64,000 nt of DNA from contig NC_086101.1 of the NCBI RefSeq assembly GCF_963921235.1, forward strand, positions 2,108,001 through 2,172,000, given 5' to 3'. Below the pieces are notes generated by a model that searched no databases, was not told the origin of the DNA, and saw only the letters and a program-made list of their open reading frames with translations. Every line of letters begins with the position of its first letter. Within the stretch, counting starts at the first letter, position 1. Below are positions 283 through 54,945 of this stretch, piece after piece. The translations under genes were made by a program, and so were the position numbers. Source of the DNA: Mobula hypostoma (lineage: Eukaryota).

Positions 283-390
283 CTGTGTTCTGAAACAACG
301 TTGAAAGCATGAAGGCAGTAATTGATGTCAGCAAGCAGCCAAGACCAAAAATGGCCACTGTTATTATCTTGTATTCATGTGGGCGCATGC
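283..390 (-). CDS. Exon 3 (transmembrane) of unnamed Ig-superfamily membrane protein
   Basis: Minus-strand acceptor ttttcttgttcgtgtttcag| and donor |gtatga; 108 bp, phase 1-1; encodes GMRPHEYKIITVAIFGLGCLLTSITAFMLSTLFQNT (hydrophobic helix); splices in frame to the Ig exon. Confidence 0.8.
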
Positions 391-519
391 CTGAAACACG
401 AACAAGAAAACAATCAGCAACACTGCACTCGATTCAGCACTGCTGTCATATCAAATTGAAAACTAGTATGCGATTCTGACCGGTTTCAGGATCCACAGCT
501 TAAATATCTCTCAAGTAAG

Positions 520-820
520 CTGGAGTCTAGGAGCAGAGGTCACAGCCTCAGAACAGGGGAGGACTTTCTTTAGCCAGAGTGTAGTGATTCTTTGGAATTC
601 ATTGCCACAGATCGCAATGGAGGCCAAGCCACTGGGTATCGTTGAAGCAGAGCTCATAGGTTCTTGATTAGTCAGGGAATTAAAGGTTATGTGAACAAGG
701 CAAGAGAATGGGGTTAAGGGGAAAATTAAATCAGCCCCGGTGGAATAGCAGAGCAGACATGATGGGCAGAATGGCCTAATTCTGTTCCCATATCATATGA
801 ACATGTTAGAAGAATCCCAA
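520..820 (+). mobile_element. CR1 LINE 3' fragment
   Basis: Resembles the CR1 ORF2 end and 3' UTR (ttctttagccagagtgtagtg...tggcctaattctg) also seen at 44990-45235. Confidence 0.65.
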
Positions 821-1245
821 TAAATACCCATGCCGTCAGTTTGCAACACATTTCAAAGGTGGTCTGTTAAAGGAGCTCCCCACCCTGAAACATGACTGAA
901 TTTGGAGAGAACAATTCAGTTCCAGTTTTATGCCATTGTTTTGTTTTTAACTGACCTTTGACCAGTCATCAGAATCATAATCACTGGCACATGTTGTAAA
1001 ACTTGTTTTTGGTGGAAGGTGAAACTGCGTCCAGCAGAACTTTAACTCAAAAGGATTGATGTTTCAATTGATGCCAAGTCTCTGTGATAGGCAAGATCAG
1101 TCATCTCCCAGTAGTAACTCCTTCAGCATCACAGGATGAGCATCACCAAAACGCAGTTACAAAATGGTAATGAAGGTTTATCTTTGGATATTATCATGTC
1201 AGACTGAAGCATGAATGATCAGTATCTATCAGTCATATGAACAGA

Positions 1246-2074
1246 AACAGGCCAGGGCTGAGAAGTGGCAGATGCAGTTCAACCCAGATAAGTGTGAAGT
1301 GGTTCATTTTGGTAGCTCAAATATGATGGCAGAATATAGCATTAATGGTAAGACTCTTGGCAGTGTGGAGGATCAGAGGGATCTTGGGGTCCGAGTCCAT
1401 AGGACACTCAAAGCTGCTACGCAGGTTGACTCTGTGGTTAAGAAGGCGTATGGTCCATTGGCCTTCATCAATCGTGGGATTCAGTTTAAGAGCCGAGAGG
1501 TAATGTTGCAGCTATATAGGACCCTGGTCAGAGCCCAATTGGAGTACTGTGCTCAATTCTGGTCACCTCACTACAGAAAGGATGTGGAAACCATAGAAAG
1601 GGTGCAGAGGAGATTTACAAGGATGTTTCCTGGATTGGGGAGCATGCCTGATTAGAACAGATTGAGTGAACTCAGCCTTTTCTCCTTGGAGTGACAGAGG
1701 ATGAGAGGTGACCTGATAGAGGTGTATAAGAAGATGAGAGGCATTGATCGTGTGGATAGTCAGAGGCTTTTTCCCAGGGTTGAAATGGCTAGCACGAGAG
1801 GGCATAGTTTTAAGGTGCTTGGAAGTAGGTACAGAGGGGATATCAGTGGTAAGTTTTTTTACACAGAGAGTGGTGAGTGCGTGGAATGGGCTGCCAGCGG
1901 CGGTGGTGGAGGTGGAAATGATAGGGTCTTTTAAAAGACTCCTGGATGGATACATGGAGCTTAGAAAAATAGAGGGCTATGGGTAAGCCTAGGTAGTTCT
2001 AAGGTAAGGACATGTTTGGCACAGCTTTGTGGGCCGAAGGGCCTGTATTGTGCTGTAGATTTTCTGTGTTTCTA
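1246..2074 (+). mobile_element. CR1 LINE, 5'-truncated (RT C-terminus plus 3' UTR)
   Basis: WQMQFNPDKCEVVHFG, LEYCAQFWSP, RGDLIEVYK motifs; ends in a tttctgtgtttcta tail; in-frame stops. Confidence 0.9.
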
Positions 2075-3525
2075 CCAGAGGATTGGAGGATATCCAATGT
2101 TGTTCTGCTGTTTAAGAAAGGCTCTAAAAATAAACAGGGAAATTCTCAGCCAGTTACCCTGACATCAATACCGGGAAAATTACTGAAAGGGACTGGATAT
2201 AAGAGTATTTGGATTGCTTTGTGCATGCTAAGTCATGTCTAACCAATCTTATACAGTTTTTAGAAGAAGTTAAGAGGAAATTTGAGGAAGGGAAGGCGGT
2301 GGATGTTGTCTACGTGGACTTTAGGAGGGCATTTCATAAGGTCCGACGTGGGAGGCTGGTCTAGAAGGTTCAGTCGCTGGGCATTCAAGATGAGGTAGTA
2401 AATTCAATTAGCCAGTGGCTTTGTGGGAGAAGCCATTGAGTGGTAGTCGAGGTTGCCTCTCTGCCTGGAGGCCTGTGGCTAGTGGAGTCCTGCAGGGATT
2501 GGTGCTGGGTCCTGTTTGTTATCTCTATCAATGATCTGGATGATAATGTGTTTAATTGGATAATTTCACCTTTCGCCCTTAACCCATGACCTCTAGTTCT
2601 GGTTCCACCCTACCTCAGTCAAAAAAGCCTGCTTGCATTTACCCTGTCTATACCCCTCATAATTTTACATACCTTTATCAAATTTCACCTCAATCTTCGA
2701 CATTCCAAAGGATTTAATCCAAAACTATTCAATTTTTCCTTATAACTAAGTCCTCCAGACACAGCAACACCCTTGTAAATTTTCTCCACACACTTTCAAC
2801 CTTATTTACATTTTCCTGCAGGCAGGTGATCAAAACTGCACACAATACTCCAAGTTAGACCTCACCAATGTCTTATACAATTTCAACATAACATCCCATC
2901 TCCTGTACTCAATATTTAATTTATGAAGGTTAATGTGCCAAAAGCTTTCTTTATATTACCCTGTCAACCTATGACGCCACTTTCAACGTTTCAACGAGTT
3001 GCGGACCTATAATCCCAGATCCTTTTGTTCTACTGCAATCCTCAGTGCCCCAACATTCACTTATCTGGGTTGAACTCCATCTGCCACTTCTCAGACCAGT
3101 TTTGCATCCTATCAATGTCTCGCTGTAACCTCTGACAGCCCTCCATACTATCCACAACACCTCCAACCTTTGTATTATCAGCCAATTTACTAATCCATCC
3201 TTCCACTTCCTCATCCAGGTCACTTATAAAAAACACGAAGAGTAAGGGTCCCAGAACAGATCCCCGAGACACACCACTGCTCACCAGCCTCCATGCAGAA
3301 TATGACCCGTCTACAACCACTCCTTGCCTTCTGTGGGAGAGCCAGTTCTGGATCCACAAAGCAATGTCCCCTTGGATCCCATGCCCTCTCATGGCCCCTT
3401 CTGGTTCTCCTAATTTCATTCTTAAAATCCTTCCTGTTAGCCTTATAATTTTCTAGATCTCTATCATTACCTAGTTTTTTTGAACCTTTTGTAAGATCTT
3501 CTTTTCTTCTTGACTAGATTTACAA
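2075..3525. mobile_element. Mosaic of CR1 ORF2 fragments (+ 2075-2560, - 2561-3525)
   Basis: EDWRISNVVLLFKKG on +; GSVLGPLLF...ADNTKVGG...WQMEFNPDK on -. Confidence 0.8.
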
Positions 3526-5510
3526 AAGCCATCGGGCCAACCCAGAGCAAGTCAGCACCATTGAAAACCATAACAGGCGAGACCTTCAATGACAAAGGCA
3601 AACAGATGGAGAGATGGGTGGAGCATTACTCTGAACTCTTCTCCAGAGAAAACAGCATCTCGGACAGCGCGCTAGACGCCGTGGAATGCCTGCCTGTCAT
3701 GGAGGAACTTGATGCATTGCCGACTGCCGAAGAGCTGAGTAAAGCCATTGACAGCCTGCCCACTGGGAAGGCACCAGGATTGGATGGCATTCCACCAGAG
3801 GCCATCAAATGTGCAAAGGGCGTCCTGCTAAACCACCTGAACCAACTACTGTGCCAGTGCTGGACAGAGGGAGCAGTGCTGCAAGACATGAGAGACTGCA
3901 ACATTATCACCCTATATAAGAACAAAGAGGACAGAAGCGACTGTAACAACTACAGAGGAATCTCCTTGCTGAGCATCGTTGGGAAGGTCCTCACCTGCGT
4001 GGTCCAGAACAGACTGCAGAAAATAGCCGAAAGGGTATATCCTGAGTCTCAGTGCAGTTTTGGGTCAGAACGTTCCACAATCGATATGATCTTCTCCCTT
4101 CGACAGCTACAAGAGAAATGCAGAGAGCAAAGACAACCACTCTACATCGCTTTCATTGACCTCACGAAGGCCTTCGACCTTGTGAGCAGAGACAGTCTGT
4201 TCAAAATCCTCACCAGGATTGGTTGTCCCCCGAGGCTCCTCAGGATTGTTCAGTCATTCCACACAGACATGAAGGGTGTCGTTTAGTTCGACGGCTCTTC
4301 GGAGGCCTTCAGCATCCGCAGCGGTGTGAAGCAGGGCTGTGTGCTTGCCCCCACCCTGTTTGGCATCTTCTTCGCAGTCATGCTGAAGCACGCCTTTGGA
4401 ACATCAACTAATGGTGTCTAACTCCACACCAGATTGGACGGGAGGCTGTTTAGAATGTCCCGGCTGAGGGTGAAAACCAAGGTTCGTGAAGTACTCATCA
4501 GGGACATGTTGTTTACAGACGACACGGCACTGGCAACACACTCTGAAGAGCAACTGCAACACCTCATGGACAGCTTCTCAAGAGCCTCCCAGGACTTCAG
4601 CTTGACCATTGGCCTGAAGAAGACCAACGTGATGGTCCAAGGCACTGAGCACCCCCCCCCCGCCATTACCATCAACAACTACGAGCTGGAGGTAGTTCAC
4701 GAGTTTACATACCTTGGCTCCACCATCACGGACAGCCTCTCCCTAGACCCTGAGATCAACAGACGGATCGGACGAGCAGCCTCAACATTCGCCAGGTTGA
4801 CAAAGAGAGTCTGGGAGAACAGAAAGCTGACGATGCACACCAAGGTTGCAGTCTACTGGGCCTGTGTCCTCAGCACACTGCTTTACGGCAGCGAGACCTG
4901 GAGCCTCTACTCCAGACAACAGCAGCATCTCGACAACTTCCACCTTCGCAGCCTGAGACGCATCCTGGACATCACATGGACTGACCGAGTCACCAACAAT
5001 GAGGTCCTGGCCCGCGCCCAGATACCCAGCCTCTTCACCTTGCTCCAACAATGCTGACTCCGCTAGCTGGGCCACGTACACTGCATGTCAGATGGGAGGA
5101 TCCCGAAAGACCTGCTTTACGGGGAACTGGCCTCCGGCAAGAGGGCACAAGGGCGGCCCCATCTTCATTTCAAAGATGTCTGCAAGAGAGACATGAAGTC
5201 ATTGAAAATGACCGTCGAGAGGTGGGAGGACATCGCAAGCGATCGCTCTCACTGGAGGCTGGAACTACGCTGAGGTCTAAAAAGAGGAGAAGAGAAGCTG
5301 AGGCTTGCTGCTGAAGAAAAGCGCACTCGTCGGAAAAACAGCACCAAGACAACACTGGAGGATGGTGCCTTCAAGTGCAGTCGCTGCAGCCGAGACTGTC
5401 ACTCCCGTGTGGGACTCTACAGCCACAACAGACGCTGCTCTAACACAGACTGAAGCAAGACTTTCCAGGCACAGATCTATGGTCTCGTGAGACTAATGGA
5501 TACCACCACG
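3526..5510 (+). mobile_element. RTE-clade non-LTR retrotransposon, 5'-truncated, inserted into a CR1
   Basis: GKAPGLDGIPPE, NYRGISLLS, FIDLTKAFD, GVKQGCVLAPTLF, LFTDD, FTYLGS, LLYGSETW, GRIPKDLLYGEL; C-terminal CxxC...HxxxC; minus-strand CR1 resumes at 5511. Confidence 0.9.
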
Positions 5511-6070
5511 ACTGTACACCACGGTTCCTGTACCCTACCATCCTTTCCCTGTCTCATTGGAACGTATCTATGCAGAACCCCACACAAATATCCCCTGAAC
5601 ATTTGCCACATTTCTGCCATACGCTTCCCTGAGAACATCTGTTTCCAATTTATGCTTCCAAGTTCCTGCCTGATAGCTTCATATTTTCCCTTACTTCGGT
5701 TAAACATTTTCCTAACTTGTCTGTTCCTATCCTCCTCCAATGCTATGGTAAAGGAAATAGAATTGTGATCACTATCTCCAAAATGCTCTCCCACTGAGAG
5801 ACTGGGAGTCTCCAGGACCTCCCACATCTGACACCGAGCACAGAAAACTGGCCTCACACACGTTCTGTCTGTAATCTACACAAGTAACGTACCTCACGTT
5901 GACCCATTATTGCCTAAGCCCTGTTGAGCCAAAGCCTTCCTACTCTGTCTCCCTCTACTCTGTTGTCTGCCCCAACGGCCGCTTTGTGAAGCTGTCTTCT
6001 TTTTAAACTCTTCTCGCTGTTCGCTCTGGCCGACATCCACGCACTTGCGCAGTCATGCCCTGTTCAAACC
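5511..6070 (-). mobile_element. CR1 fragment (ORF2 GEHFGDSDHN region fused to ORF1/5' piece)
   Basis: ORF 5477-5857: FCARCQMWEV then SVGEHFGDSDHNSISF. Confidence 0.75.
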
Positions 6071-6149
6071 ACTTAAGAAATAACCTGGTACTTCACCTGT
6101 TGCTAGGGTGTCTCTGTGAGGGCCCTGGCAGTTTCTGCACTTGCCTTAA

Positions 6150-6640
6150 TTGAATTGACTTGACTTAATTTCTTACATGCTTCACATACATGAGGAGTAA
6201 AAATCTTTATGTTACATCTCCGTCTGAATGTGCAGTGTGCAAATTATAGCAACTTGTAACATATACAACAGAAATACACATGTGTCAGCATAAATTAATC
6301 AGTCTGATGGCCTGGTGGAAGAAGCTGTCCCGGAGCCTGTTGGTCCTGGCTTTTATGCTGTGGTACTGTTTCCTGGATGGTAGCAGCTGGAACAGTTTGT
6401 GGTTGGGGTGACTTGTGTCCCCAGTGATCCTTTGGGCCCTTTTTACACACCTGTCTTTGTAAACGTCCTGAATAGTGGGAAGTTCACAACTACAGATGGG
6501 CTGGGCTGTCTGCACCACTCTCTGCAGAGACCTGTGATTGAGGGAAGTACAGTTCCCGTACCACGCAGTGATGCAGCCAATCAGGATGCTCTCAGTTGTG
6601 CCCTGTAGAAAGTCCTTAGGAGTTAGGGACTCATGCCAAA
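6150..6640 (-). mobile_element. Rex1/Babar LINE 3' fragment
   Basis: HPNHKLFQLLPS...RTNRLRDSFFHQAIRLIN; nearly the same as 22400-22770. Confidence 0.8.
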
Positions 6641-6649
6641 CTTCACTTT

Positions 6650-9600
6650 CAGTAGCACAGAGGCTGGCACAGCACCCTACAGTGGCACGGAGGCCAGCGC
6701 GACACCCTACAGTGGCACAGAGGTCAGCACAACACCCTACAGTGGCACAGAGGCCAGCGCGACACCCTACAGTGGCACAGAGGCCAGCGCGACACCCTAC
6801 AGTGGCACGGAGGCCAGCGCGACACCCTACAGTGGCACGGAGGCCAGCGCGACACCCTACAGTGGCACAGAGGCCAGCGCGACACCCTACAGTGGCACGG
6901 AGGCCAGCGCGACACCCTACAGTGGCACGGAGGCCAGCGCGACACCCTACAGTGGCACGGAGACTGGCACAACACCCTACAGTGGCACGGAGGCTGGCAC
7001 AACACCCTACAGTGGCACAGAGGCCAGCACGACACGTTACAGTGGCACGGAGGCCAGCACGACACCCTACAGTGGCACGGAGGCCGGCACGACACCCTAC
7101 AGTGGCACGGAGGTCAGCACGACACCCTACAGTGGTACGGAGGCCAGCACGACACCCTACAGTGGCACAGAGGCTGGCACAACACCCTACAGTGGCACGG
7201 AGGTCAGCACGACACCCTACAGTGGCACGGAGGCCAGCGCGACGCCCTACAGTGGTACGGAGGTCAGCACGACACCCTACAGTGGCACGGAGGCCAGCGC
7301 GACACCCTACAGTGGCACGGAGGCCAGCGCGACACCCTACAGTGGCACGGAGGCCAGCGCGACACCCTACAGTGGCACGGAGGCCAGCACGACACCCTAC
7401 AGTAGCACGGAGGCCAGCACGACACCCTACAGTGGCACAGAGGTCAGCACGACACGTTACAGTGGCACAGAGGTCAGCACGACACCCTACAGTGGCACGG
7501 AGGCCAGCACGACACCCTACAGTGGCACGGAGGTCAGCACGACACCCTACAGTGGCACGGAGGCCAGCACGACACCCTACAGTGGCACAGAGGCCAGCAC
7601 GACACGTTACAGTGGCAGGGAGGCTGGCACAACACCCTACAGTGGCACAGAGGTCAGCACGACACGTTACAGTGGCACAGAGGTCAGCACGACACCCTAC
7701 AGTGGCACAGAGGCCAGCACGACACGTTACAGTGGCAGGGAGGCTGGCACAACACCCTACAGTGGCACAGAGGTCAGCACGACACGTTACAGTGGCACAG
7801 AGGTCAGCACGACACCCTACAGTGGCACAGAGGCTGGCACAACACCCTACAGTGGCACGGAGGCCAGCGCGACGCCCTACAGTGGCACAGAGGTCAGCAC
7901 GACACCCTACAGTGGCACGGAGGTCAGCACAACACCCTACAGTGGCACGGAGGCCAGCGCGACACCCTACAGTGGCACGGAGGCCAGCACGACACCCTAC
8001 AGTGGCACGGAGGTCAGCACGACACGTTACAGTGGCACAGAGGTCAGCACGACACGTTACAGTGGCACAGAGGTCAGCACGACACCCTACAGTGGCACAG
8101 AGGCCAGCACAACACCCTACAGTGGCACGGAGGCCAGCACAACACGTTACAGTGGCACAGAGGTCAGCACGACACGTTACAGTGGCACAGAGGTCAGCAC
8201 GACACCCTACAGTGGCACAGAGGCCAGCACAACACCCTACAGTGGCACGGAGGTCAGCACAACACCCTACAGTGGCACGGAGGCCAGCACAACACGTTAC
8301 AGTGGCACAGAGGCCAGCACGACACCCTACAGTGGCACAGAGGCCAGCACAACACCCTACAGTGGCACGGAGGTCAGCACGACACCCTACAGTGGCACGG
8401 AGGCCAGCACAACACGTTACAGTGGCACAGAGGCCAGCACGACACGTTACAGTGGCACGGAGGCCGGCACAACACCCTACAGTGGCACGGAGGTCAGCAC
8501 GACACGTTACAGTGGCACGGAGGTCAGCACGACACGTTACAGTGGCACGGAGGTCAGCACGACACCCTACAGTGGCACGGAGGTCAGCACGACACCCTAC
8601 AGTGGCACGGAGGCCAGCACGACACCCTACAGTGGCACGGAGGCCAGCACGACACCCTACAGTGGCACGGAGGCCAGCACGACACCCTACAGTGGCACGG
8701 AGGCCAGCACAGCACCCTACAGTGGCACGGAGGCCAGCACGACACCCTACAGTGGCACAGAGGCCGGCACGACACCCTACAGTGGCACGGAGGTCAGCAC
8801 GACACCCTACACTGGCACAGAGGCCAGCACGACACCCTACACTGGCACAGAGGCCAGCACGACACCCTACAGTGGCACGGAGGCCAGCACGACACCCTAC
8901 ACTGGCACGGAGGCCAGCACGACACGTTACAGTGGCACGGAGGTCAGCGCGACACCCTACAGTGGCACGGAGGCCGGCACGACACCCTACAGTGGCACGG
9001 AGGCCGGCACGACACCCTACAGTGGCACGGAGGCCAGCACGACACCCTACAGTGGCACGGAGGCCAGCACGACACCCTACACTGGCACGGAGGCCAGCAC
9101 GACACGTTACAGTGGCACGGAGGTCAGCACGACACGTTACAGTGGCACGGAGGTCAGCGCGACACGTTACAGTGGCACGGAGGCCGGCGCGACACCCTAC
9201 AGTGGCACGGAGGTCGGCGCGACACCCTACAGTGGCACGGAGGTCGGCGCGACACCCTACAGTGGCACGGAGGTCGGCACGACACCCTACAGTGGCACGG
9301 AGGTCGGCACGACACCCTACAGTGGCACGGAGGCCGGCACGACACCCTACAGTGGCACGGAGGCCGGCACGACACCCTACAGTGGCACGGAGGTCGGCAC
9401 GACACCCTACAGTGGCACGGAGGCCGGCACGGCACCCTACAGTGGCACGGAGGCCAGCACGACACCCTACACTGGCACGGAGGCCAGCACGTCACGTTAC
9501 AGTGGCACGGAGGTCAGCACGACACGTTACAGTGGCACGGAGGTCAGCGCGACACGTTACAGTGGCACAGAGGCCGGCACGACACCCTACAGTGGCACGG

Positions 9601-12600
9601 AGGCCGGCACGACACCCTACAGTGGCACGGAGGCCAGCACGACACCCTACAGTGGCACAGAGGCCGGCACGACACCCTACAGTGGCACGGAGGTCAGCAC
9701 GACACCCTACACTGGCACAGAGGCCAGCACGACACCCTACAGTGGCACAGAGGCCAGCACGACACCCTACAGTGGCACGGAGGCCAGCACAACACCCTAC
9801 ACTGGCACGGAGGCCAGCACGACACGTTACAGTGGCACGGAGGTCAGCGCGACACCCTACAGTGGCACGGAGGCCGGCACGACACCCTACAGTGGCACGG
9901 AGGCCGGCACGACACCCTACAGTGGCACGGAGGCCAGCACGACACCCTACAGTGGCACGGAGGCCAGCACGACACCCTACACTGGCACGGAGGCCAGCAC
10001 GACACGTTACAGTGGCACGGAGGTCAGCGCGACACGTTACAGTGGCACGGAGGTCAGCGCGACACGTTACAGTGGCACGGAGGCCGGCGCGACACCCTAC
10101 AGTGGCACGGAGGTCGGCGCGACACCCTACAGTGGCACGGAGGTCGGCACGACACCCTACAGTGGCACGGAGGCCGGCACGACACCCTACAGTGGCACGG
10201 AGGTCGGCACGACACCCTACAGTGGCACGGAGGCCGGCACGACACCCTACAGTGGCACGGAGGCCGGCACGACACCCTACAGTGGCACGGAGGCCGGCAC
10301 GACACCCTACAGTGGCACGGAGGCCAGCACGGCACCCTACAGTGGCACGGAGGCCAGCACGACACCCTACAGTGGCACGGAGGCCAGCACGACACCCTAC
10401 ACTGGCACGGAGGCCAGCACGTCACGTTACAGTGGCACGGAGGTCAGCACGACACGTTACAGTGGCACGGAGGTCAGCGCGACACGTTACAGTGGCACAG
10501 AGGCCGGCACGACACCCTACAGTGGCACGGAGGCCGGCACGACACCCTACAGTGGCACGGAGGTCAGCACAGCACCCTACAGTGGCACGGAGGCCAGCAC
10601 GACACCCTACAGTGGCACAGAGGCCGGCACGACACCCTACAGTGGCACGGAGGCCGGCACGACACCCTACAGTGGCACAGAGGCCAGCACGACACCCTAC
10701 AGTGGCACGGAGGCCAGCACGACACCCTACAGTGGCACGGAGGCCAGCACGACACCCTACACTGGCACGGAGGCCAGCACGACACGTTACAGTGGCACGG
10801 AGGTCAGCGCGACACCCTACAGTGGCACGGAGGCCGGCACGACACCCTACAGTGGCACGGAGGCCGGCACGACACCCTACAGTGGCACGGAGGCCAGCAC
10901 GACACCCTACAGTGGCACGGAGGCCAGCACGACACCCTACACTGGCACGGAGGCCAGCGCGACACGTTACAGTGGCACGGAGGTCAGCGCGACACGTTAC
11001 AGTGGCACGGAGGTCGGCGCGACACGTTACAGTGGCACGGAGGCCGGCGCGACACCCTACAGTGGCACGGAGGTCGGCGCGACACCCTACAGTGGCACGG
11101 AGGTCGGCACGACACCCTACAGTGGCACGGAGGCCGGCACGACACCCTACAGTGGCACGGAGGCCGGCACGACACCCTACAGTGGCACGGAGGCCGGCAC
11201 GACACCCTACAGTGGCACGGAGGTCAGCACGACACCCTACAGTGGCACGGAGGCCAGCACGGCACCCTACAGTGGCACGGAGGCCAGCACGACACCCTAC
11301 ACTGGCACGGAGGCCAGCGCGACACCCTACACTGGCACGGAGGCCAGCACGACACGTTACAGTGGCACGGAGGTCAGCACGACACGTTACAGTGGCACGG
11401 AGGTCAGCGCGACACGTTACAGTGGCACAGAGGCCAGCGCGACACGTTACAGTGGCACAGAGGCCGGCACGACACCCTACAGTGGCACGGAGGCCGGCAC
11501 GACACCCTACAGTGGCACGGAGGTCGGCGCGACACGTTACAGTGGCACAGAGGCCAGCGCGACACGTTACAGTGGCACAGAGGCCAGCACGACACCCTAC
11601 AGTGGCACGGAGGCCAGCACAACACCCTACAGTGGCACGGAGGCCAGCGCGACACGTTACAGTGGCACGGAGGCCAGCGCGACACGTTACAGTGGCACGG
11701 AGGCCAGCGCGACACCCTACAGTGGCACGGAGGCCAGCGCGACGCCCTACAGTGGCACAGAGGCCAGCGCGACACGTTACAGTGGCACAGAGGCCAGCGC
11801 GACGCCCTACAGTGGCACAGAGGCCAGCGCGACATGTTACAGTGGCACAGAGGCCAGCGCGACGCCCTACAGTGGCACAGAGGCCAGCGCGACGCCCTAC
11901 AGTGGCACAGAGGCCAGCGCGACACGTTACAGTGGCACGGAGGCCAGCGCGACACGTTACAGTGGCACGGAGGCCAGCGCGACACGTTACAGTGGCACGG
12001 AGGCCAGCGCGACACGTTACAGTGGCACGGAGGCCAGCGCGACGCCCTACAGTGGCACAGAGGCCAGCGCGACGCCCTACAGTGGCACAGAGGCCAGCGC
12101 GACGCCCTACAGTGGCACAGAGGCCAGCGCGACGCCCTACAGTGGCACAGAGGCCAGCGCGACGCCCTACAGTGGCACAGAGGCCAGCGCGACGCCCTAC
12201 AGTGGCACAGAGGCCAGCGCGACACCCTACAGTGGCACAGAGGCCAGCGCGACACCCTACAGTGGCACAGAGGCCAGCGCGACACCCTACAGTGGCACAG
12301 AGGCCAGCGCGACACGTTACAGTGGCACAGAGGCCAGCGCGACGCCAGCACGACGCCCTACAGTGGCACAGAGGCCAGCGCGACACCCTACAGTGGCACA
12401 GAGGCCAGCGCGACACCCTACAGTGGCACAGAGGCCAGCGCGACACCCTACAGTGGCACAGAGGCCAGCGCGACACGTTACAGTGGCACAGAGGCCAGCG
12501 CGACACGTTACAGTGGCACAGAGGCCAGCGCGACGCCAGCACGACGCCCTACAGTGGCACAGAGGCCAGCACGACGCCCTACAGTGGCACAGAGGCCAGC

Positions 12601-12895
12601 GCGACACCCTACAGTGGCACAGAGGCCAGCGCGACACCCTACAGTGGCACAGAGGCCAGCGCGACACCCTACAGTGGCACAGAGGCCAGCGCGACACGTT
12701 ACAGTGGCACAGAGGCCAGCACAGCACCCTACAGTGGCACAGAGGCCAGCGCGACACCCTACAGTGGCACAGAGGCCAGCGCGACACGTTACAGTGGCAC
12801 AGAGGCCAGCACAGCACCCTACAGTGGCACAGAGGCCAGCGCGACGCCAGCACGATGCCCTACAGTGGCACAGAGGCCAGCACAACACTCTACAG
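6650..12895 (+). repeat. 30-bp minisatellite, about 207 units (AGTGGCAC[A/G]GAGG[C/T]C[A/G]GC[A/G]CGACAC[CC/GT]TAC)
   Basis: Direct 30-bp periodicity; three 11-bp partial duplications near 12345, 12535 and 12845; lies in intron 2 of the Ig gene. Confidence 0.98.
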
Positions 12896-13130
12896 CAGAG
12901 CTGACCCAGGTTGAATTCCTGCTGCTGCCTCGAAGGAGTTTGTCCATTCTCCCTGTGACCGCGTGGATCTCCTTTGTGTGCTGGCATTTCCTCCCACAGT
13001 GCAATGGTGTACCGGTTGCTGGGTTAAATGGTTGCTCTAAGTTGTCCCATGATTAGGCTCTATCAGGGTTGCCGGGCGGTGCCTTTGGAAGGGCAGATTC
13101 CACCCTGCATCTCAATACTACAAATAATCT
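12863..13130 (+). mobile_element. tRNA-derived V-SINE (HE1-like)
   Basis: A-box-like TGGCACAGAGG, B-box-like GGTTGAATTCC (~12909), V-domain-like ttctccctgtgaccgcgtgg...tttcctcccacag, A-rich tail. Confidence 0.8.
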
Positions 13131-13359
13131 TAAAAAAAAGCTTGTAAAAAGTTGCAGGGAAGATGGGAGTGGGGAACGTCTGATGATCTTTAATGATTTT
13201 ATGAACTGGGCATGGACAATAAAAGCCAGAATTTGCAGAAACATTTATAAATAAAGATCCAGACCCCTTCCCTTTGCAAATAACATTTAAAATTGTTTAC
13301 TGTAGACACCTGACGTTGTGTCAGGTCACCCAGTGGTCTGAGGTGCTAATGAAACTCAC

Positions 13360-13620
13360 CGTCAACAACTAAATTGAATGTTTCTTTTTCAACGACACTA
13401 TTATTTCTTGCAATGCAGGTAAATAATCCGCAATCATCATAGTCAGCATCGGGAATATACAAGCTGGAATTGTCAGCAGACAGTTTATAAATAGTTGCTA
13501 TGTCGACATCTTCTTTCGTCCATTCAAATCTGCTACCATTCTCTGAAGAAATGCATTTCAGTTCGATCGTTTGGTGCGCTCTGCTGCTATTGTGTGTTAT
13601 TGTAAGTTCAGACCAAACAG
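13360..13620 (-). CDS. Exon 2: single C2/I-set-like Ig domain of unnamed membrane protein
   Basis: Acceptor tttttgctgttttag|, donor |gtgagt; 261 bp, phase 1-1, no stops: AVWSELTITHNSSRAHQTIELKCISSENGSRFEWTKEDVDIATIYKLSADNSSLYIPDADYDDCGLFTCIARNNSVVEKETFNLVVD; canonical C-x10-W...DxGxFxC. Confidence 0.9.
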
Positions 13621-14629
13621 CTAAAACAGCAAAAATCAGTGTTAATCCAACAATTTCACTTGTCTGCTAAAATCTATTGATTTACAACCTTTTTCTCTCA
13701 CTCTCGTGGGAGAATTACTTTTTAGGAAATTCATAACTTGGCTTCTCATTAATTTGCATATTCTAGTCGTCCCTGCCACTGAAAACTGCGTTCACATTTG
13801 GTTCATTTTCACACAGTAAACTTCAGTGGGAATCTCCCTTTACCGGCAGATTGCCTATCTGTAACTCCTGTAGTGGTCATCAATGCTGCCTCTCTCTCTC
13901 CACCAAGCTGCCACATCACACAGTGATGTGGGAGCGGGAAAATTCAAAAACCCGAGGCGCCGAGGGCCTTGTTCATTTGCAGGTTGAATTAGTGCTGGGG
14001 AAGGCAAATACACTGTCAGCACGCAATTCAAGAGGGGTTTGTATAATCTGGCATGCTGCAAGTCCGACTTGTTGATTTACTGACTGAGAGCTGGGGCGGA
14101 TCATGGTATTGAATTATCAGGCGGGAGGTACGGGAGCATTAGGACCCATTACTGGACGGGGCTGCCTGCTTGCAGCCGCCCGGAGCGAGGGGGAGGAAGC
14201 CGCGCCTTTCACTTGTGGCGGTGTGTTCACAACGGCGTTGAAGCTGCCCCTCGCAGGGGTTCGCTCTGGCAGAAGACAGGCTTGCACTCAGGCCTGAAGC
14301 CGCGGGGCCGCTTGCTTTTCAGCTGCCGGAGGAGAGCTGGCAGCTCTGCCGATTCCGCATGGGCTGCAGGGTCTGGACTACATGTTTGTCTGGCTGTGCC
14401 TTTGCACGTGTTTGTATATGTGAGGCCACAGACTTGAGTCGGGCGTTGGGCCGAGGCCTGGGCCTGGGCCTCCAAGCCGGGCGTCCTCACACACGGAACG
14501 GTCAGATGGTTATCAGTGGCCCCCACCCCGGATCGGGCAGGAGGTACGGGACAACACCTGTTCGGATGGGAAGCAGCCTCGCCCCCTCGGGCGCGGCGAG
14601 GGGAGGGCCGGGGGAGATGCCCGCCTCAC

Positions 14630-14693
14630 CTCGGACGACCACCGGGGCCAACAAGCCGAAGGCCCGGAGCCGGGAGGCGGCCAGCAGCGCCAT
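14630..14693 (-). CDS. Exon 1 (leader/signal peptide) of the Ig membrane gene
   Basis: Kozak gacgccATGg; MALLAASRLRAFGLLAPVVVR then phase-1 donor g|gtgagg, compatible with the Ig exon; lies in a CpG island. Confidence 0.75.
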
Positions 14694-21659: not shown

Positions 21660-22770
21660 ACTCTGAGAGGCTGGTCAAGGACTACGTCTGCAGCTTGCTG
21701 CCGCCCACACTGGACCCCCTACAATTCACCTACCGACACAATCGATCGACAGACCATGCAATAGCCACAGCTCTACACACGGAACTTACACATCTGGGGA
21801 AGAGGGATGCTTATGTGAGAATGCTGTTCTTGGACAACAGCTCAGCATTCAACACCATAATTCCCTCTAGGATCAACGAGAAGCTCAGAGATCTCGGCCT
21901 TCACCCTGCCTTGTGCAGCTGGATCCTGGACTTCCTGTCAGATCACCTCTGCTCCTCAGGTCTGTGTCCTAAGCCCCTCCTTTGCTCTCTGTATACCCAC
22001 AACTCCAATCTGCGAATTAAATTTGCTGACAACACTACACTGATTGGCCTAATCTCAAATAATAATGGGGCAGCCTACAGAGAAGAAGTCATCACCCTGA
22101 CACAGTGGTGTCAAGAAAACAACCTCTCTCTCAATGTCGCAAAAACAGAGGAGTTGGTTGCGAACTACAGGAAGCATGGAGACGGGTTAACCCCTATTGA
22201 CATCAGTGGATCTGGGGTTGAGAGGGTGAAGTTCCTCGGCAAACACATCACTGAGGATTTGTACATACCAGCTGTGTGGTGAAAAAGGCACAAGTCCTAA
22301 GGACTTTCTACAGGAACACAACTGACAGCATCCTCCTGACTGGCTGCGTCACTGCCTGGTATGGGAACTGTACCCCTCTTAATCGCAAGGCTCTGCGGAG
22401 AGTGGTGCAGACAGCCCAGTGCATCTGTAGATGTGAACTTCCAGGACATTTACAAAGACAGGTGTGTAAAAAGGGCCCGAAGGATCACTAGAGACCTGAG
22501 TCACCCCAACCACAAACTGTTCCAGCTGCTGCCATCTGGGAAACGGTATCACAGCATAAAAGCCAGGACCAACAGGCTCTGGGACAGCTTCTTCCACCAG
22601 GCCATCAGACTCATTAATTCATACTGACACAACTGTATTTCTATGTTACATTGACTGTCGGTTATACATACTATTTATTACAAGTTACTATAAATTGCAC
22701 ATTTAGAGACAAAATGTAAAGATTTTTACTCCTCGTGTATATGCAGGATGTAAGAAGTAAAATCGGTTCT
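21660..22770 (+). mobile_element. Rex1/Babar LINE, truncated and internally deleted
   Basis: [46 protein letters not shown]. Confidence 0.85.
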
Positions 22771-25704: not shown

Positions 25705-26540
25705 TGGGGATGAGGATGGAGGCAAGCGAGGGAGGGAGGGAGGCGAGTAGGTGAGGGTGGAGGGAGGAGCGGAGGGGCTGAGGGTGGGTGGAGGGGAGAC
25801 GAAGGTTGGGGGAGGGGAGGGGTAAAGTTGGGGGGAGGAGGGAAGGGGTGAGGTAGGGGGGAGTGGAGGGGGTGAGGGTGGCTGGAGGGGAAGGGTGGCT
25901 GGAGGGGAGGGGTGAGGGTGGAGGAGGGGAGGGGTGAGGGTGGGTGGAGGGGAGACGAAGGATAGGAGGGAGGAGAGGGGTGAGGGTGGGGGAGTGGAGG
26001 GGTGAGGGTGGGGTGGGGGTGGGGTGGGGTGGGGAGGGGTAAGGTTGGGGGAGGAAGGAAGGGGTGAGGGGGAGTGGAGGGGTGGGGGAGGGGAGTGGGT
26101 GAGGGTGGCTGGAGTGGAGGTGTGAGGTTGGAGGGAGGAGCGGAGGAGCTGAGGGTGGGTGGAGGGGAGACGAAGGTTGGGGGGAGGGGAGGGGTAAAGT
26201 TGGGGGGAGGAGGGAAGGGGTGAGGTAGGGGGGAGTGGAGGGGGTGAGGGTGGCTGGAGGGGAGGGGTGAGGGTGGAGGAGGGGAGGGGTGAGGGTGGGT
26301 GGAGGGGAGACGAAGGATAGGAGGGAGGAGAGGGGTGAGGGTGGGGGAGTGGAGGGGTGAGGGTGGGGTGGGGAGGGGTAATGTTGGGGGGAGGAAGGAA
26401 GGGGTGAGGGGGAGTGGAGGGGTGGGGGAGGGGAGTGGGTGAGGGTGGCTGGAGTGGAGGTGTGAGGTTGGAGGGAGGAGCGGAGGGGCTGAGGGTGGGG
26501 GGAGGGGAGGGGTGAGGGTGAGTTTTGGGGGAGGGGTGGC
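25705..26540 (+). repeat. G/A-rich low-complexity tract with an internal ~360-370 bp duplication (C11orf98 intron 1)
   Basis: ggagacgaaggttggggg at ~25795 and ~26167; ggagacgaaggatagg at ~25951 and ~26306. Confidence 0.85.
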
Positions 26541-40840: not shown

Positions 40841-41416
40841 AGTTATCCTCTTTTGTTCAAAGCCAGATGGTTGAGTGATAGTAACTGTTCTTGAACCTGG
40901 TGCTGTGAGTCCTGAGTCTCCTGTACCTTCTACCTGATGGCAGCAGTGAGAAAAGAGCACGGGGTGGAAAGGGTTAGGAGCAGAGTGCTAGGGTCAAGAC
41001 AGCAGGGGTAGAGTCAAGAAAAGGGTTCTGGGGTCAGTGGAGCAGTGCTAGGGGCAGAGGGAAGGGTTCTGGGGGTCAGGAGGTCAGTGCTAGGGGCAGA
41101 GGGAAGGGTTCTGGGGGTCAGGAGGACAGTGCTAGGGGCAGAGGGAAGGGTTCTGGGGGTCAGGAGGACAGTGCTAGGGGCAGAGGGAAGGGTTCTGGGG
41201 GTCAGGAGGACAGTGCAGAGGTCAGGAGAAGGGTTCTGGGGGTCAGGAGGACAGTGCTAGGGGCAGAGGGAAGGGTTCTGGGGGTCAAGAGGACAGTGCA
41301 GAGGTCAGGAGAAGGGTTCTGATGCCTGTGCTCAGACAGCAGTTTTGCCTCCTGCCTGGTACTGATGAGGTGTGTGTATGGGTGAAAGGCAGTGTAGTGG
41401 GTTTCTAGTTATTGAT
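39428..41416 (+). repeat. Local direct duplication (39428-39816 and 40941-41416) containing a ~42-bp purine-rich tandem repeat
   Basis: Both copies run from gcagca.tgagaaaagagcacggggtggaaaggg to gggtttctagttattgat. Confidence 0.85.
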
Positions 41417-41821
41417 TACCTATACCCAAGGACATGGTGGAGTTGCCCGTAGCGGAACATTATTAGAGAGCCAGTGACCGCAGTTCCGTTCTCACCGCTG
41501 CCTGTACGATGACTGTGTGGGTTTCCTCCGGGTGCTCTGGTTTCCTCCCACAGTCCAAAGTTGTGCAGGTTATGGTCAGCAGGTTCTGTATTGGTCTGTT
41601 GGCACCGGATGCTTGCTGTCCAACCCCAGAACATCCGTGAACTGGGCTGGTTGTTGCTGCAAAGCACACATTGCACAGTATGTTTCATTCTGGGTGCAGG
41701 ATTCCAACATCTCTCTGCGTCAGGAACATAGAAAACCCACAGCACAATACAGGCCCTTCGGCCCACAATGCTGTGCCCAACATGTCCTTACCTGAGAAAT
41801 TACCAAGGGCTTACCCACGCA

Positions 41822-52695: not shown

Positions 52696-53139
52696 CAGGT
52701 GGTACCCCTCGAGCTGCGCTCCTGAATCGTGTGGATAAACCCCACCCCACCCCACTCCCCACTCCCCACTCCCCACTCCCCCCCCACTCCCCACCCCACC
52801 CCACTCCCCACCCCCCACCCCACCCCACTCCCCACCCCACTCCACACCTCACCCCACCACACTCTACTCCCCACCCCACTCCCCACTCCACCCCACCCCA
52901 GTCCCCACCCCACCCCCCCCACTCCCCACCCCACCCCCCCCACTCCCCAACTCTGACTCCGCGACTTTTATATGTCCAGCTGCTGCTGGTGGGGGCTCAG
53001 CCCGGAACGTCGACTTTCCTTGCCGTGACTGCTGAGTTTGTGCGCGGTACCTGGGTCTGCGGGTTTTCTCTGGTTCCGGTTCTGAAACTTACTTTGACCC
53101 CTGGAGAGGGGGGGCAGTGTCGGAGACAGGACAACTCCC

Positions 53140-53310
53140 GCGCCGCCGCCGCCGAGCGCTTGCCCGAGGACGCGCGCTCCCGCCGCCGAGCGCTTGCCCG
53201 AGGACGCGCGCTCCCGCCGCCGTGCGCTTGCCCGAGGACGCGCGCTCCCGCCGCCGTGCGCTTACCCGAGGACGCGCGCTCCCGCGCCGCCGCCGCCGCC
53301 GCCGCCGCTG
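53140..53310. repeat. 34-bp CpG-rich repeat x4 plus (GCC)n
   Basis: gccg[a/t]gcgctt[g/a]cccgaggacgcgcgctcccgcc. Confidence 0.9.
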
Positions 53311-53481
53311 TTCGCTGACCAAGAGCGCGGGCTCTGATGCCAACCGTCCGCAGTTTGAAATCGCAGGTCGGCGCCGCCTCGGCCAATCAGCTGAGGCGGT
53401 GGATGAGACACGTGACTCGGAGCGTCCAATAGATTCAGAGCGGTTGCCCGGTGAGCTGCCGTTTGTTTCAGGAAGGGCTCG
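53310..53481. promoter_or_regulatory. Putative bidirectional CpG-island promoter (SMIM40 - / KIFC1-like +) with non-coding first exons
   Basis: CHR-like TTTGAA 53354, CCAAT 53383 and 53426, CACGTG 53409; + donors gtgagc 53451 and gtgagg 53482; - donors gtaag ~53264 and ~53092. Confidence 0.7.
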
Positions 53482-53504
53482 GTGAGGCGCCAATTTAAAC
53501 CGGG

Positions 53505-54945
53505 GGTGGGGGTGGGGACCGGGCAATGGGGGGGGGCAGGGGGAGAGACGGGACGGGTGAAGGGAGTTGTGGTGAAGAGACGGAGGGGGATGAGACGGGA
53601 CGGGGGAGTGACGGGGTGGGGGTGAGACGGGGTGGGGGTGAGACGGAGGGGGATGAGACGGGGCGGGGGGGAGACGGAGGGGGGAGAGACGGGACCGGGG
53701 TGAGACGGGACGGGGAGACGGAGGGGGATGAGACGGGGCGGGGGGGAGACGGAGGGGGGTGAGACAGGACGGGGGGAGACGGGACGGGGGGGAGACGGGA
53801 CGGGGGGGAGACGGGACGGGACGGGGGTGAGACGGGACCGGGGTGAGACGGGACGGGGAGACGGAGGGGGAGTGACGGGATGGGGGGACGGAGCGGACAG
53901 ACGGGACGGGGAGACGGGACGGGGGTGAGAGGGGATGGGGGGACGGAGGGGGAAGACGGGACGGGGAGACGGAGGGGGAGAGACGAGACGGGGGTGAGAC
54001 GCGGGGGGGGGGAGAAATTGCCTGGGTGGGGAGAGGTGGGACACGGGCAGCCACCGATGGGTTAGGTGAAGAGAGACATGACTGTGGGGAGGAGGGGGGA
54101 GAGACGGGCAAGGGGCTGGGGATTGAGAGACGGGGCGGATGAAGACAGACGAGGCGGGGCAGGGAGAGGGGGAGATATAGGCCAGTGCGGACGGGGGGAG
54201 AGAAGGGCAGGGGCAGAAAGGAGGTGGGGTAGAGGGGGAGATGGGCCGGTGGGGTAGGGACAGAGACGGGGTTGTGTGGAGATGGGGGTAGGGGGAAGAG
54301 AGTAAGTCAGGCCTGGGGGGTAGAGAGATAGAGAGAGTTGGGGTGGGGGGAGTTCGAGAGAAATGAAGAGATGGGGTAGATGGGGTGGGGGCTGGGGAGA
54401 GACAGGGTGGGGGTAGAGGGAGTGGGAGGGAGAAGATGCCAAGGGTGATGAGGGTGGTTGGATAGGAGTTGGGGAGAGAGGTGAGGGAGGGGATGGTGGA
54501 GGGTGATGAGGGGTTTGGGGAGATGGTGATGGGAGAGGTGAGGGAGGGGAGGGTAGAGAGTGATGAAGGGTTTGAGAAGATGGTGGATAGTGATGAGGGA
54601 TTTGGGGAGATGGTGATGGGAGAGAGGCGAGGGAGGGGATGGTGGGTGATGAGGGGTTTGGGGAGATGGTGGACAGTGATGAGGGGTTTGGGGAGATGGT
54701 GATGGGAGAGAGGTGAGGGAGGGGATGGTGGGTGATGAGGGGTTTGGGGAGATGGTGATAGGGAGAGAGGTGAGGGAGGGGATGGTGGAGGGTGATGAGG
54801 GGTTTGGGGAGATGGTGATAGGGAGGGAGGGGAGGGCAGAGAGCGATAAGGGGTGAGTTGACAGAGGAACGGGACTGAAGGGGTGACGGGGTTGGTCGGA
54901 CTGACGGGGAGTGGGCATGGGCTGGGATGGGGGTGACAGGGGTGT
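53505..54945 (+). repeat. G/A-rich low-complexity and short tandem repeats (gagacggga; gatgaggggtttggggagatggt)
   Basis: Extreme G skew; mirrored by the C-rich tract at 52740-52950. Confidence 0.9.

What the first reader, a model, noticed from the sequence alone, without database searches (positions are those of the whole stretch)
6650..13130. 6.2-kb minisatellite built from the Pol III A-box segment of a SINE head
Seen: the array runs without a break into a V-SINE body (B-box-like GGTTGAATTCC at ~12909, V-domain, A tail). Each 30-bp unit carries TGGCAC[A/G]GAGG, a 9-10/11 match to the A-box consensus TRGCNNARYGG; the first unit reads TAGCACAGAGG. The unit is bounded by CAGT...CAGT microhomology. 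Inference: the tRNA-derived head was duplicated by slippage and amplified about 200-fold, leaving about 200 A-box-like motifs upstream of one B box, antisense within intron 2 of the Ig gene. This looks like satellite birth from a SINE promoter and might act as a TFIIIC platform or insulator.
Basis: partly seen in the sequence, partly recalled or inferred. Interest (0 to 1): 0.75.

Follow-up and report, generated by a model that had tools for sequence, protein, structure and literature searches.

The report
Minisatellite grown from SINE head
A 6.2-kb run of about 207 copies of a 30-base unit in a ray gene's intron was copied from the front (tRNA-like) end of one SINE that is still attached; this is a clean example of a known way that repeat arrays arise, with no sign of function.

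Summary
A 30-bp tandem array runs from 6650 to about 12892 (about 207 units) and joins the rest of a tRNA-derived SINE (to about 13130) without a break.

The origin claim is supported. A profile built only from related SINE copies of other organisms aligns to 12862-13000 (E 8.5e-11) and covers the whole last unit. The unit equals head positions about 9-39: the A box through the anticodon-arm region. In the closest relative this segment lies between two short ACAG repeats. The SINE has no separate head of its own.

The array grew by single-unit duplication and by duplication of blocks of about 900 bp. It lies antisense in intron 2 (391-13360) of an Ig-domain membrane gene and makes up 48% of that intron.

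The TFIIIC platform or insulator idea has no support. TFIIIC is anchored by the B box. The units carry only degenerate A-box-like motifs, and the single B box is itself mutated.

The long plus-strand open frames, which read like a mucin repeat, are a by-product of the unit. Three 11-bp insertions shift the frame.

Earlier notes of this scan report many transposon-seeded arrays in this same ray genome on other DNA, and SINE-derived satellites are published for squamates. I rate it a new member of a known kind, of low to moderate interest.

The parts
6650..12892 (+). 30-bp minisatellite of about 207 units, consensus CAGTGGCACGGAGGCCAGCACGACACCCTA. Each unit corresponds to SINE head positions about 9-39 (A-box-like motif through the anticodon-arm region).
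   Evidence: Homology to SINE heads.
8780..11450 (+). Zone of higher-order structure inside the array: a block of about 30-32 units (900-960 bp) present three times at 98-99% identity.
   Evidence: runs of 6-7 identical units at lags of 30, 31, 32 and 62 units; sliding identity up to 0.993.
12320..12862 (+). The end of the array nearest the SINE. It holds three 41-bp units (at 12320, 12511 and 12822), each with an 11-bp internal duplication (GCCAGCACGAC) that shifts every reading frame.
12863..12892 (+). Last unit, which is also the SINE's own head segment. It has no CpG and 57% GC. Its A-box-like motif TGGCACAGAGG is at 12866.
12893..13130 (+). Rest of the parent tRNA-derived SINE: the 3' half of the head with the B-box-like motif GGTTGAATTCC (12909-12919), a conserved central core (about 12935-13000), and the 3' region with an A-rich tail.
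   Evidence: nhmmer E 8.5e-11 against a profile of non-ray SINE copies.
6162..6645 (-). 5'-truncated 3' fragment of a LINE (C-terminal ORF2 plus 3' UTR). It lies head-to-head against the array start, within about 5 bp.
   Evidence: It is 80% identical to a copy at 22292-22764 that continues upstream into an ORF matching Pfam RVT_1 (reverse transcriptase).
13361..13620 (-). Exon 2 (Ig domain) of the host gene. Its donor site GTGAGT lies just below 13361.
   Evidence: Pfam Ig_3 3.9e-08, I-set 2.8e-07.
14628..14693 (-). Exon 1 of the host gene (start codon and signal-peptide-like sequence MALLAASRLRAFGLLAPVVVR), followed by a GTGAGG donor.
   Evidence: read directly from the sequence.
283..390 (-). 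Exon 3 of the host gene (transmembrane segment). The acceptor is tttcag|GC, the donor is ACAG|gtatga, and the phase fits the end of exon 2. Intron 2 is therefore 391-13360.

Best explanation
One copy of a tRNA-derived SINE sits on the + strand, antisense in intron 2 of an Ig-domain membrane gene of a ray.

A 30-nt piece of its head, running from the A box to the anticodon-arm region, was first duplicated at the DNA level. The likely mechanism is slippage or unequal exchange between two short ACAG repeats that flank this segment in the head.

Once two or more copies existed, replication slippage and unequal sister-chromatid or homologue exchange, including duplication of blocks of about 900 bp, grew the array to about 207 units (6.2 kb).

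Shown: the array itself, its homology and continuity with the SINE head, the block duplications, and its position in the intron.

Inferred: the slippage mechanism, the order of events, and the neutrality of the array. Its only evident effect is that it makes up nearly half of intron 2 and adds a GC-rich, CpG-dense block there.
For: - Array anatomy.
- Homology: in alignment A1 the last unit plus the junction is colinear with the heads of independent SINE copies (L007, L015, L006 and others). Those copies start GGGCAGCA|CAGTGGC.TAGTGGTTAGCACTG.TGCCT.A|CAGCAAG.
- A profile built without any ray sequence matches 12862-13000 at E 8.5e-11, and the alignment begins at the first base of the last unit.
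- The unit scores above 5000 shuffles against the two closest heads (p 0.0004 or less).
- The A-like to B-like spacing in the last unit is 43 nt, which is tRNA-like.
- There is no second head and no other copy of the unit elsewhere in the window.
- A block of 30-32 units is repeated three times at 98-99% identity.
- 17 of 30 unit positions are invariant across 189 units, and variation sits at a few hot positions, as in classical minisatellite variant repeats.
- The unit lacks the first 8 nt or so of the SINE RNA. This argues against reverse-transcriptase template switching to RNA 5' ends and for a DNA-level origin (inference).
- Published precedent: SINE-derived satellites with head-containing units (PMC10702118).
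- Earlier scan notes report many transposon-seeded arrays in this genome.
Against: - The head consensus used comes from related SINEs of other, unidentified organisms in metagenome contigs, not from this ray's own family. Identity over the unit is only about 65-70%.
- No target-site duplication was found around the SINE plus array. The first 8 nt or so of the head are missing, so the original insertion boundaries are not defined.
- Neutrality is assumed, not tested.
Confidence: 0.85

Rival explanations
1. The array has a function as a TFIIIC, Pol III or chromatin-boundary platform. About 200 A-box-like motifs, and in 39 units a weak B-box-like motif at tRNA-like spacing, would recruit TFIIIC and act as an insulator or chromatin organiser inside the Ig-gene intron. 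This concerns function and is compatible with the same origin.
For: There are 202 A-box-like motifs on one strand. In 39 units the sequence GGC[A/G]CGACACC matches GGTTCGANNCC with 2 mismatches, 43 nt downstream of the preceding A-like motif. The block is CpG-dense (observed/expected 0.75, 66% GC) and so resembles a CpG island. TFIIIC-only sites are known to act as insulators (PMC11811891).
Against: TFIIIC is anchored by high-affinity B-box binding, and A-box binding is weak or undetectable on its own (PMC11811891). No unit matches the B box with one mismatch or fewer. The 2-mismatch matches lack the conserved TT, and matches of that quality occur at 1.3 per kb in the rest of the window. The SINE's own B-box-like motif departs at the core C-G positions. 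132 of the A-like motifs carry 2 mismatches to TRGCNNAGTGG. There are no binding or expression data.
Confidence: 0.04
2. The array came first. A 5'-truncated SINE then inserted beside it, or annealed to it, so the array did not arise from this SINE copy.
For: No target-site duplication encloses SINE plus array. The window holds several unrelated minisatellites, so arrays are common here.
Against: The last unit supplies exactly the missing 5' half of the head, in register and at tRNA-like spacing from the B-box-like motif. All other units are about 90% identical to it. An unrelated array would have to mimic the head by chance (p 0.0004 or less against the nearest heads). If the earlier array were itself head-derived, the origin claim would still stand.
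Confidence: 0.04
3. The array is a protein-coding mucin-type (Pro/Thr/Ser-rich) repeat exon on the + strand. One frame reads SGTEASTTPY about 190 times in an ORF of 2093 codons.
For: Two + frames stay open right through the array. The translation scores against annotated mucin-2-like proteins (E 5e-19). AG and GT dinucleotides lie at its borders.
Against: The three 11-bp insertions move the reading into the two other frames, so the Pro/Thr/Ser-rich frame is not kept. The frame QWHGGQHDTL is open as well, so openness follows from the unit's composition. Six of eleven variable positions change the amino acid in that frame, including Pro to Arg in 25% of units. The ORF runs into the SINE body, lies between transposon fragments, and is antisense inside another gene's intron. 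The mucin hits are invertebrate and compositional (22-65% identity over repeats). A 120-residue piece finds nothing.
Confidence: 0.02
4. The length or the internal order of the array is an assembly artefact. The array is real, but its size or block structure is misassembled.
For: Long, near-identical internal blocks are the kind of structure that assemblers can duplicate or collapse.
Against: The register is strict and the patterns of unit variants are ordered and non-random. The edges are distinct, and there are no Ns.
Confidence: 0.05

Closest known systems
SINE-derived satellites (sSat) of squamate reptiles (Vassetzky, Kosushkin and Ryskov 2023, PMC10702118)
   Same: Both are tandem arrays whose unit is a portion of a tRNA-derived SINE. 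In several of the published cases the unit includes part of the head with a promoter box. They arose independently from different SINE families.
   Different: The published units are 67-215 nt, usually include box B and/or the body, and occur at many loci with satellite-like, probably subtelomeric, distribution. Here the unit is only 30 nt, covers box A and the anticodon-arm region only, and is seen at one locus still attached to its parent copy. The host is a ray, not a reptile.
Transposon-seeded in-situ arrays reported by this scan in the same ray genome (for example s1-142417 from a CR1 LINE, s1-141887 from Penelope, s1-141961 from an LTR, s1-143012 'SINE inflated to 5.5 kb')
   Same: The process is the same: a short internal piece of a dead mobile element is amplified head-to-tail on the spot, often inside introns.
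   Different: The parent segment here is the Pol III promoter-bearing head of a SINE. I did not re-test those notes.
Classical GC-rich minisatellites (own knowledge of the Jeffreys-type class)
   Same: The unit is 10-60 bp and GC-rich. A few variant positions are interspersed along the array, the edge units are diverged, and growth is by unequal exchange or slippage.
   Different: Here the ancestral sequence of the unit can be named. Length polymorphism and recombination activity are untested.
Extra-TFIIIC (ETC) sites and tRNA-gene insulators
   Same: The only shared feature is sequence of Pol III type-2 promoter origin (A-box-like motifs).
   Different: ETC sites and insulators depend on B-box recognition by the tauB part of TFIIIC (PMC11811891). 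The units here lack a B box.

Membership tests
SINE-derived satellite / minisatellite | Head-to-tail tandem array of at least four units | tested here: met
   About 207 units, 92% matches between neighbouring copies.
SINE-derived satellite / minisatellite | The unit is homologous to a defined part of a SINE | tested here: met
   The unit is colinear with head positions about 9-39 of independent SINE copies. A profile alignment at E 8.5e-11 runs through the last unit.
SINE-derived satellite / minisatellite | Many loci across the genome, or heterochromatic or subtelomeric distribution (a satellite in the strict sense) | not testable with these tools
   There is one locus in this window. No whole-genome search was available. 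A look-up by sequence was blank.
tRNA-derived SINE of the V-SINE superfamily (HE1-like) | tRNA-related head with A and B boxes at tRNA-like spacing | tested here: met
   TGGCACAGAGG is at 12866 and GGTTGAATTCC at 12909, 43 nt apart. Both are degenerate: 1 and 2 mismatches to the consensus. ARAGORN and Rfam find no tRNA.
tRNA-derived SINE of the V-SINE superfamily (HE1-like) | The conserved central V domain | tested here: inconclusive
   The locus shares a conserved core (GGAGTTTG..C.TTCTCCC.GTG ... TTTCCTCCCACAG) with 12 independent SINE copies. No curated repeat library was available to confirm that this core is the V domain; my memory of HE1-type consensus sequences says it is.
tRNA-derived SINE of the V-SINE superfamily (HE1-like) | 3' tail shared with a partner LINE | tested here: inconclusive
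   The tail shows no significant similarity to the 3' end of the adjacent LINE family (p 0.34 and 0.98). Other LINE families were not tested.
TFIIIC-bound ETC site / insulator | A B-box motif able to anchor TFIIIC | tested here: not met
   No match with one mismatch or fewer anywhere in the array. There are 39 matches with 2 mismatches that lack the TT, a quality found at 1.3 per kb in the rest of the window.
TFIIIC-bound ETC site / insulator | TFIIIC occupancy or boundary activity | not testable with these tools
   No ChIP or chromatin data were available.
Mucin-type (Pro/Thr/Ser-rich) coding tandem repeat | One reading frame kept along the repeat under purifying selection | tested here: not met
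   Three 11-bp insertions shift the frame. Variation shows no third-position bias and includes Pro to Arg in 25% of units.
Mucin-type (Pro/Thr/Ser-rich) coding tandem repeat | Expression as part of a spliced mRNA with a signal peptide | not testable with these tools
I did not look for a + strand signal-peptide exon; the upstream 5 kb that I examined is LINE debris.

The most novel reading that the evidence does not exclude
The amplified A-box segment is not inert. About 200 phased A-box-like motifs, 39 of them followed at tRNA-like spacing by a weak B-like motif, form a 6-kb CpG-dense block. That block could weakly recruit TFIIIC, condensin or cohesin, or stay unmethylated, and so act as a new boundary or regulatory element inside an immune-type Ig-domain gene. 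This would be a satellite born from a Pol III promoter that keeps some promoter-factor affinity.
Probability: 0.04. Interest if true: 0.7.

Novelty: new member of a known kind. Interest (0 to 1): 0.25.

Why it matters
The locus is an unusually legible snapshot of how a tandem array starts. The parent SINE is still attached. The amplified segment can be mapped to the base: head positions about 9-39, bounded by a short ACAG repeat. The later block duplications are still visible.

It extends SINE-derived tandem repeats, documented so far mainly in squamates, to a cartilaginous fish. It also adds to the picture from this scan that this ray genome readily turns transposon fragments into intronic arrays; this one makes up nearly half of a 13-kb intron.

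It does not open a new biological question unless the array turns out to bind Pol III factors.

Tried and rejected
- **Other copies in the window.** I looked for other copies of this SINE family to build a same-genome head consensus. There is only one diverged relative, at about 41430-41660.
- **tRNA and RNA family scans.** ARAGORN and Rfam found nothing.
- **Protein searches as a route to other loci.** I used the array ORF as a protein query to find the same array elsewhere. It gave only compositional hits to invertebrate mucins, and a 120-residue piece gave nothing. The Ig exon as a query for orthologues also gave nothing, so the orthologous-intron test could not be done. I did not use the large representative-protein search, because the claim does not rest on the protein.
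- **Target-site duplication.** No shared 6-mer was found, either around SINE plus array or around LINE plus array plus SINE.
- **Partner LINE.** The idea that the adjacent LINE is the SINE's partner, sharing its 3' tail, showed no significant similarity.
- **Hairpin-driven expansion.** Single-strand DNA folding of four-unit stretches was no better than shuffles (z from -1.05 to +2.0).
- **Simple higher-order period across the whole array.** Lag-identity shows only weak bumps. The structure is a local triplicated block.
- **CTCF-like motif in the unit.** By eye there was no convincing match. This was not computed.
- **Look-up of the unit in earlier findings.** It was blank.
Full report
**What is there**

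Tandem Repeats Finder reports a 30-bp array at 6650-12343 (189.8 copies, 92% matches, no indels). The same unit continues at 12344-12845. My own split gives about 207 units. Three of them are 41-bp units at 12320, 12511 and 12822, each carrying an 11-bp internal duplication. The last unit starts at 12863. The consensus is CAGTGGCACGGAGGCCAGCACGACACCCTA.

In the 189 units that lie in strict register, 17 of the 30 positions never vary. Variation is concentrated at positions 10, 15, 17, 20, 22 and the linked pair 27/28. The motif TRGCACRGAGG occurs 202 times, all on the + strand and all inside the array, against 0.17 expected by chance. The window has no Ns.

**Is the unit a piece of a SINE head?**

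The window holds no second good copy of this SINE; there is only a diverged relative near 41430-41660. ARAGORN and Rfam find nothing. I therefore scanned the metagenome collection with a degenerate pattern taken from the SINE's conserved core.

Twelve of the 19 loci returned are related tRNA-derived SINEs from some other aquatic host. None looked human and none was treated as such. The remaining loci are chance matches.

In alignment A1 the complete copies begin GGGCAGCA, followed by CAGTGGC.TAGTGGTTAGCACTG.TGCCT.A, then CAGCAAGAAG...GGTTCGA, and then the shared core GGAGTTTG..C.TTCTCCC.GTG. The ray locus aligns colinearly. Its last unit corresponds to the segment from CAGTGGC to CCT.A: 31 nt in the relatives, 30 nt here, with one 1-nt gap. 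It runs straight into CAGCAGAGCTGACCCAGGTTGAATTCC and the core.

A profile built only from the non-ray copies matches window 12862-13000 at E 8.5e-11, and the alignment begins at the first base of the last unit. Against the two closest heads, the unit beats all or nearly all of 5000 shuffles (p 0.0004 or less); against more distant copies the signal is weaker. The A-like to B-like distance in the last unit is 43 nt, which is tRNA-like.

So the SINE has no separate head. The last array unit is its head segment, and the other units are about 90% identical copies of it.

**How it probably arose**

In the closest relative (L015) the amplified segment lies between two ACAG repeats: GCACAG|TGGC and TTACAG|CAAG. 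In the ray, the inter-unit junction is CTACAG|TGGC and the final junction is CTACAG|CAGA. The microhomology is therefore (A)CAG, not CAGT.

A first duplication by slippage or unequal exchange between these repeats is the simplest start. This is an inference. The unit lacks the first 8 nt or so of the SINE RNA. That argues against reverse-transcriptase template switching, which copies through to RNA 5' ends, and for a DNA-level event.

Later growth was not only unit by unit. A block of 30-32 units (900-960 bp) is present three times between about 8780 and 11450 at 98-99% identity. The 41-bp variant unit recurs three times. Four-unit stretches fold no better than shuffles as single-stranded DNA, so there is no sign of hairpin-driven expansion.

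**Surroundings**

The host gene is on the minus strand.
- Exon 1 (about 14693-14628) encodes a signal-peptide-like start and ends at a GTGAGG donor.
- Exon 2 (about 13620-13361) is an Ig domain (Pfam Ig_3 3.9e-08, I-set 2.8e-07).
- Exon 3 (390-283) encodes a transmembrane segment behind a tttcag acceptor, in the phase required by exon 2.

I described these exons by reference and did not join them into a spliced model for any search.

Intron 2 is thus 391-13360 (12,970 bp), and the array makes up 48% of it. The rest of the intron is mostly LINE debris (Pfam RVT_1 hits).

Immediately left of the array, 6162-6645 is a 5'-truncated LINE 3' fragment on the minus strand. It is 80% identical to a copy at 22292-22764 that continues into a reverse-transcriptase ORF. 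LINE and SINE therefore lie head-to-head within about 5 bp. No target-site duplication was found for any combination. The SINE tail does not resemble that LINE's tail. The order of these insertions remains open.

**Function**

The TFIIIC platform idea is not supported. TFIIIC is anchored by high-affinity B-box binding, and A-box binding is weak or undetectable alone (PMC11811891). No unit matches the B-box consensus with one mismatch or fewer. Thirty-nine units carry GGC[A/G]CGACACC, which has 2 mismatches, lacks the conserved TT, and lies 43 nt after the preceding A-like motif. Matches of that quality occur at 1.3 per kb elsewhere in the window. The SINE's own B-like motif departs from the consensus at the C-G core positions. 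This leaves a small residual probability for weak factor binding.

The array is GC-rich (66%) and CpG-dense (504 CpGs, observed/expected 0.75, against 0.40-0.50 in the flanks). Both edge units have no CpG and 57-60% GC, whereas interior units have 1.7-3.0 CpGs and 62-67% GC. Either the edge units decayed, or GC-biased conversion enriched the interior. I could not determine the direction of these changes.

**A rival I raised myself**

Two + strand frames are open through the whole array (ORFs of 2172 and 2093 codons). One of them reads SGTEASTTPY and scores against annotated mucin-2-like proteins (E 5e-19).

This is a by-product of the repeat unit, for four reasons:
- The 11-bp insertions move the reading into the other two frames.
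- The non-mucin frame is equally open.
- Variable positions show no third-codon bias and include Pro to Arg in a quarter of units.
- The ORF runs into the SINE body and lies antisense in another gene's intron.

**Comparison with what is known**

SINE-derived satellites, including units that contain part of the head and a promoter box, are described for 56 squamate genomes (PMC10702118). Earlier notes of this scan, which I did not re-test, name the genome as a devil ray. They list many transposon-seeded in-situ arrays on other DNA of the same genome, among them another SINE-derived one.

This locus is a new member of that known kind. It is notable only for its very short A-box-only unit and for the clarity with which its parent can be read.

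**Limits**

- The head consensus is from other organisms.
- The V-SINE/HE1 label rests on my memory of consensus sequences, not on a curated library.
- No reads, no orthologous locus and no expression data could be obtained.

Noticed in passing
window:6162-6645 (-) against window:6650: A 5'-truncated LINE 3' fragment abuts the 5' side of the SINE-derived array head-to-head, within about 5 bp. An earlier scan note (s1-143373) describes a head-to-head LINE/SINE pair inside one target duplication elsewhere in this genome. Here I found no target duplication and no tail similarity, so a joint insertion is neither supported nor excluded.
   Followed up: partly
window:6650-6679 and 12863-12892 compared with the array interior: Both edge units have no CpG and 57-60% GC. 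Interior units carry 1.7-3.0 CpGs and 62-67% GC. Relative to the last unit, most high-frequency differences are A-to-G or T-to-C. This is either CpG decay at non-homogenised edges or GC-biased conversion inside the array.
   Followed up: partly
window:23068-25534: A second large, very homogeneous minisatellite: 38-bp unit, 65 copies, 97% matches. It starts about 300 bp beyond the 3' end of another copy of the same LINE family (22292-22764). Its origin was not examined.
   Followed up: no
window:43358-44181; also 41021-41321, 25738-26520, 53139-54009, 54476-54836: Further minisatellites and G-rich or purine-rich tandem repeats (for example 38 bp x 22 copies at 98%). The window as a whole is rich in tandem arrays.
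   Followed up: no
L015:1175-1502 (-) and L003:1036-1363 (-): Two of the related SINE copies from metagenome contigs carry partial duplications of their own heads. L015 has an extra A-box-bearing fragment just upstream of a complete head. L003 has two B-box segments in tandem. Head-internal duplications may be recurrent in this SINE group.
   Followed up: no
window:41430-41660: A diverged SINE copy shares the conserved core (TGGGTTTCCTCCGGGTGCTCTGGTTTCCTCCCACAGTCCAAAG) but has a decayed head. It lies directly after a 42-bp minisatellite (41021-41321).
   Followed up: no
window:283-14693 (-): The host gene has three exons in the window (signal peptide, one Ig domain, transmembrane segment) with consistent splice phases. 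Its Ig exon found no relatives in the word-based protein search.
   Followed up: partly
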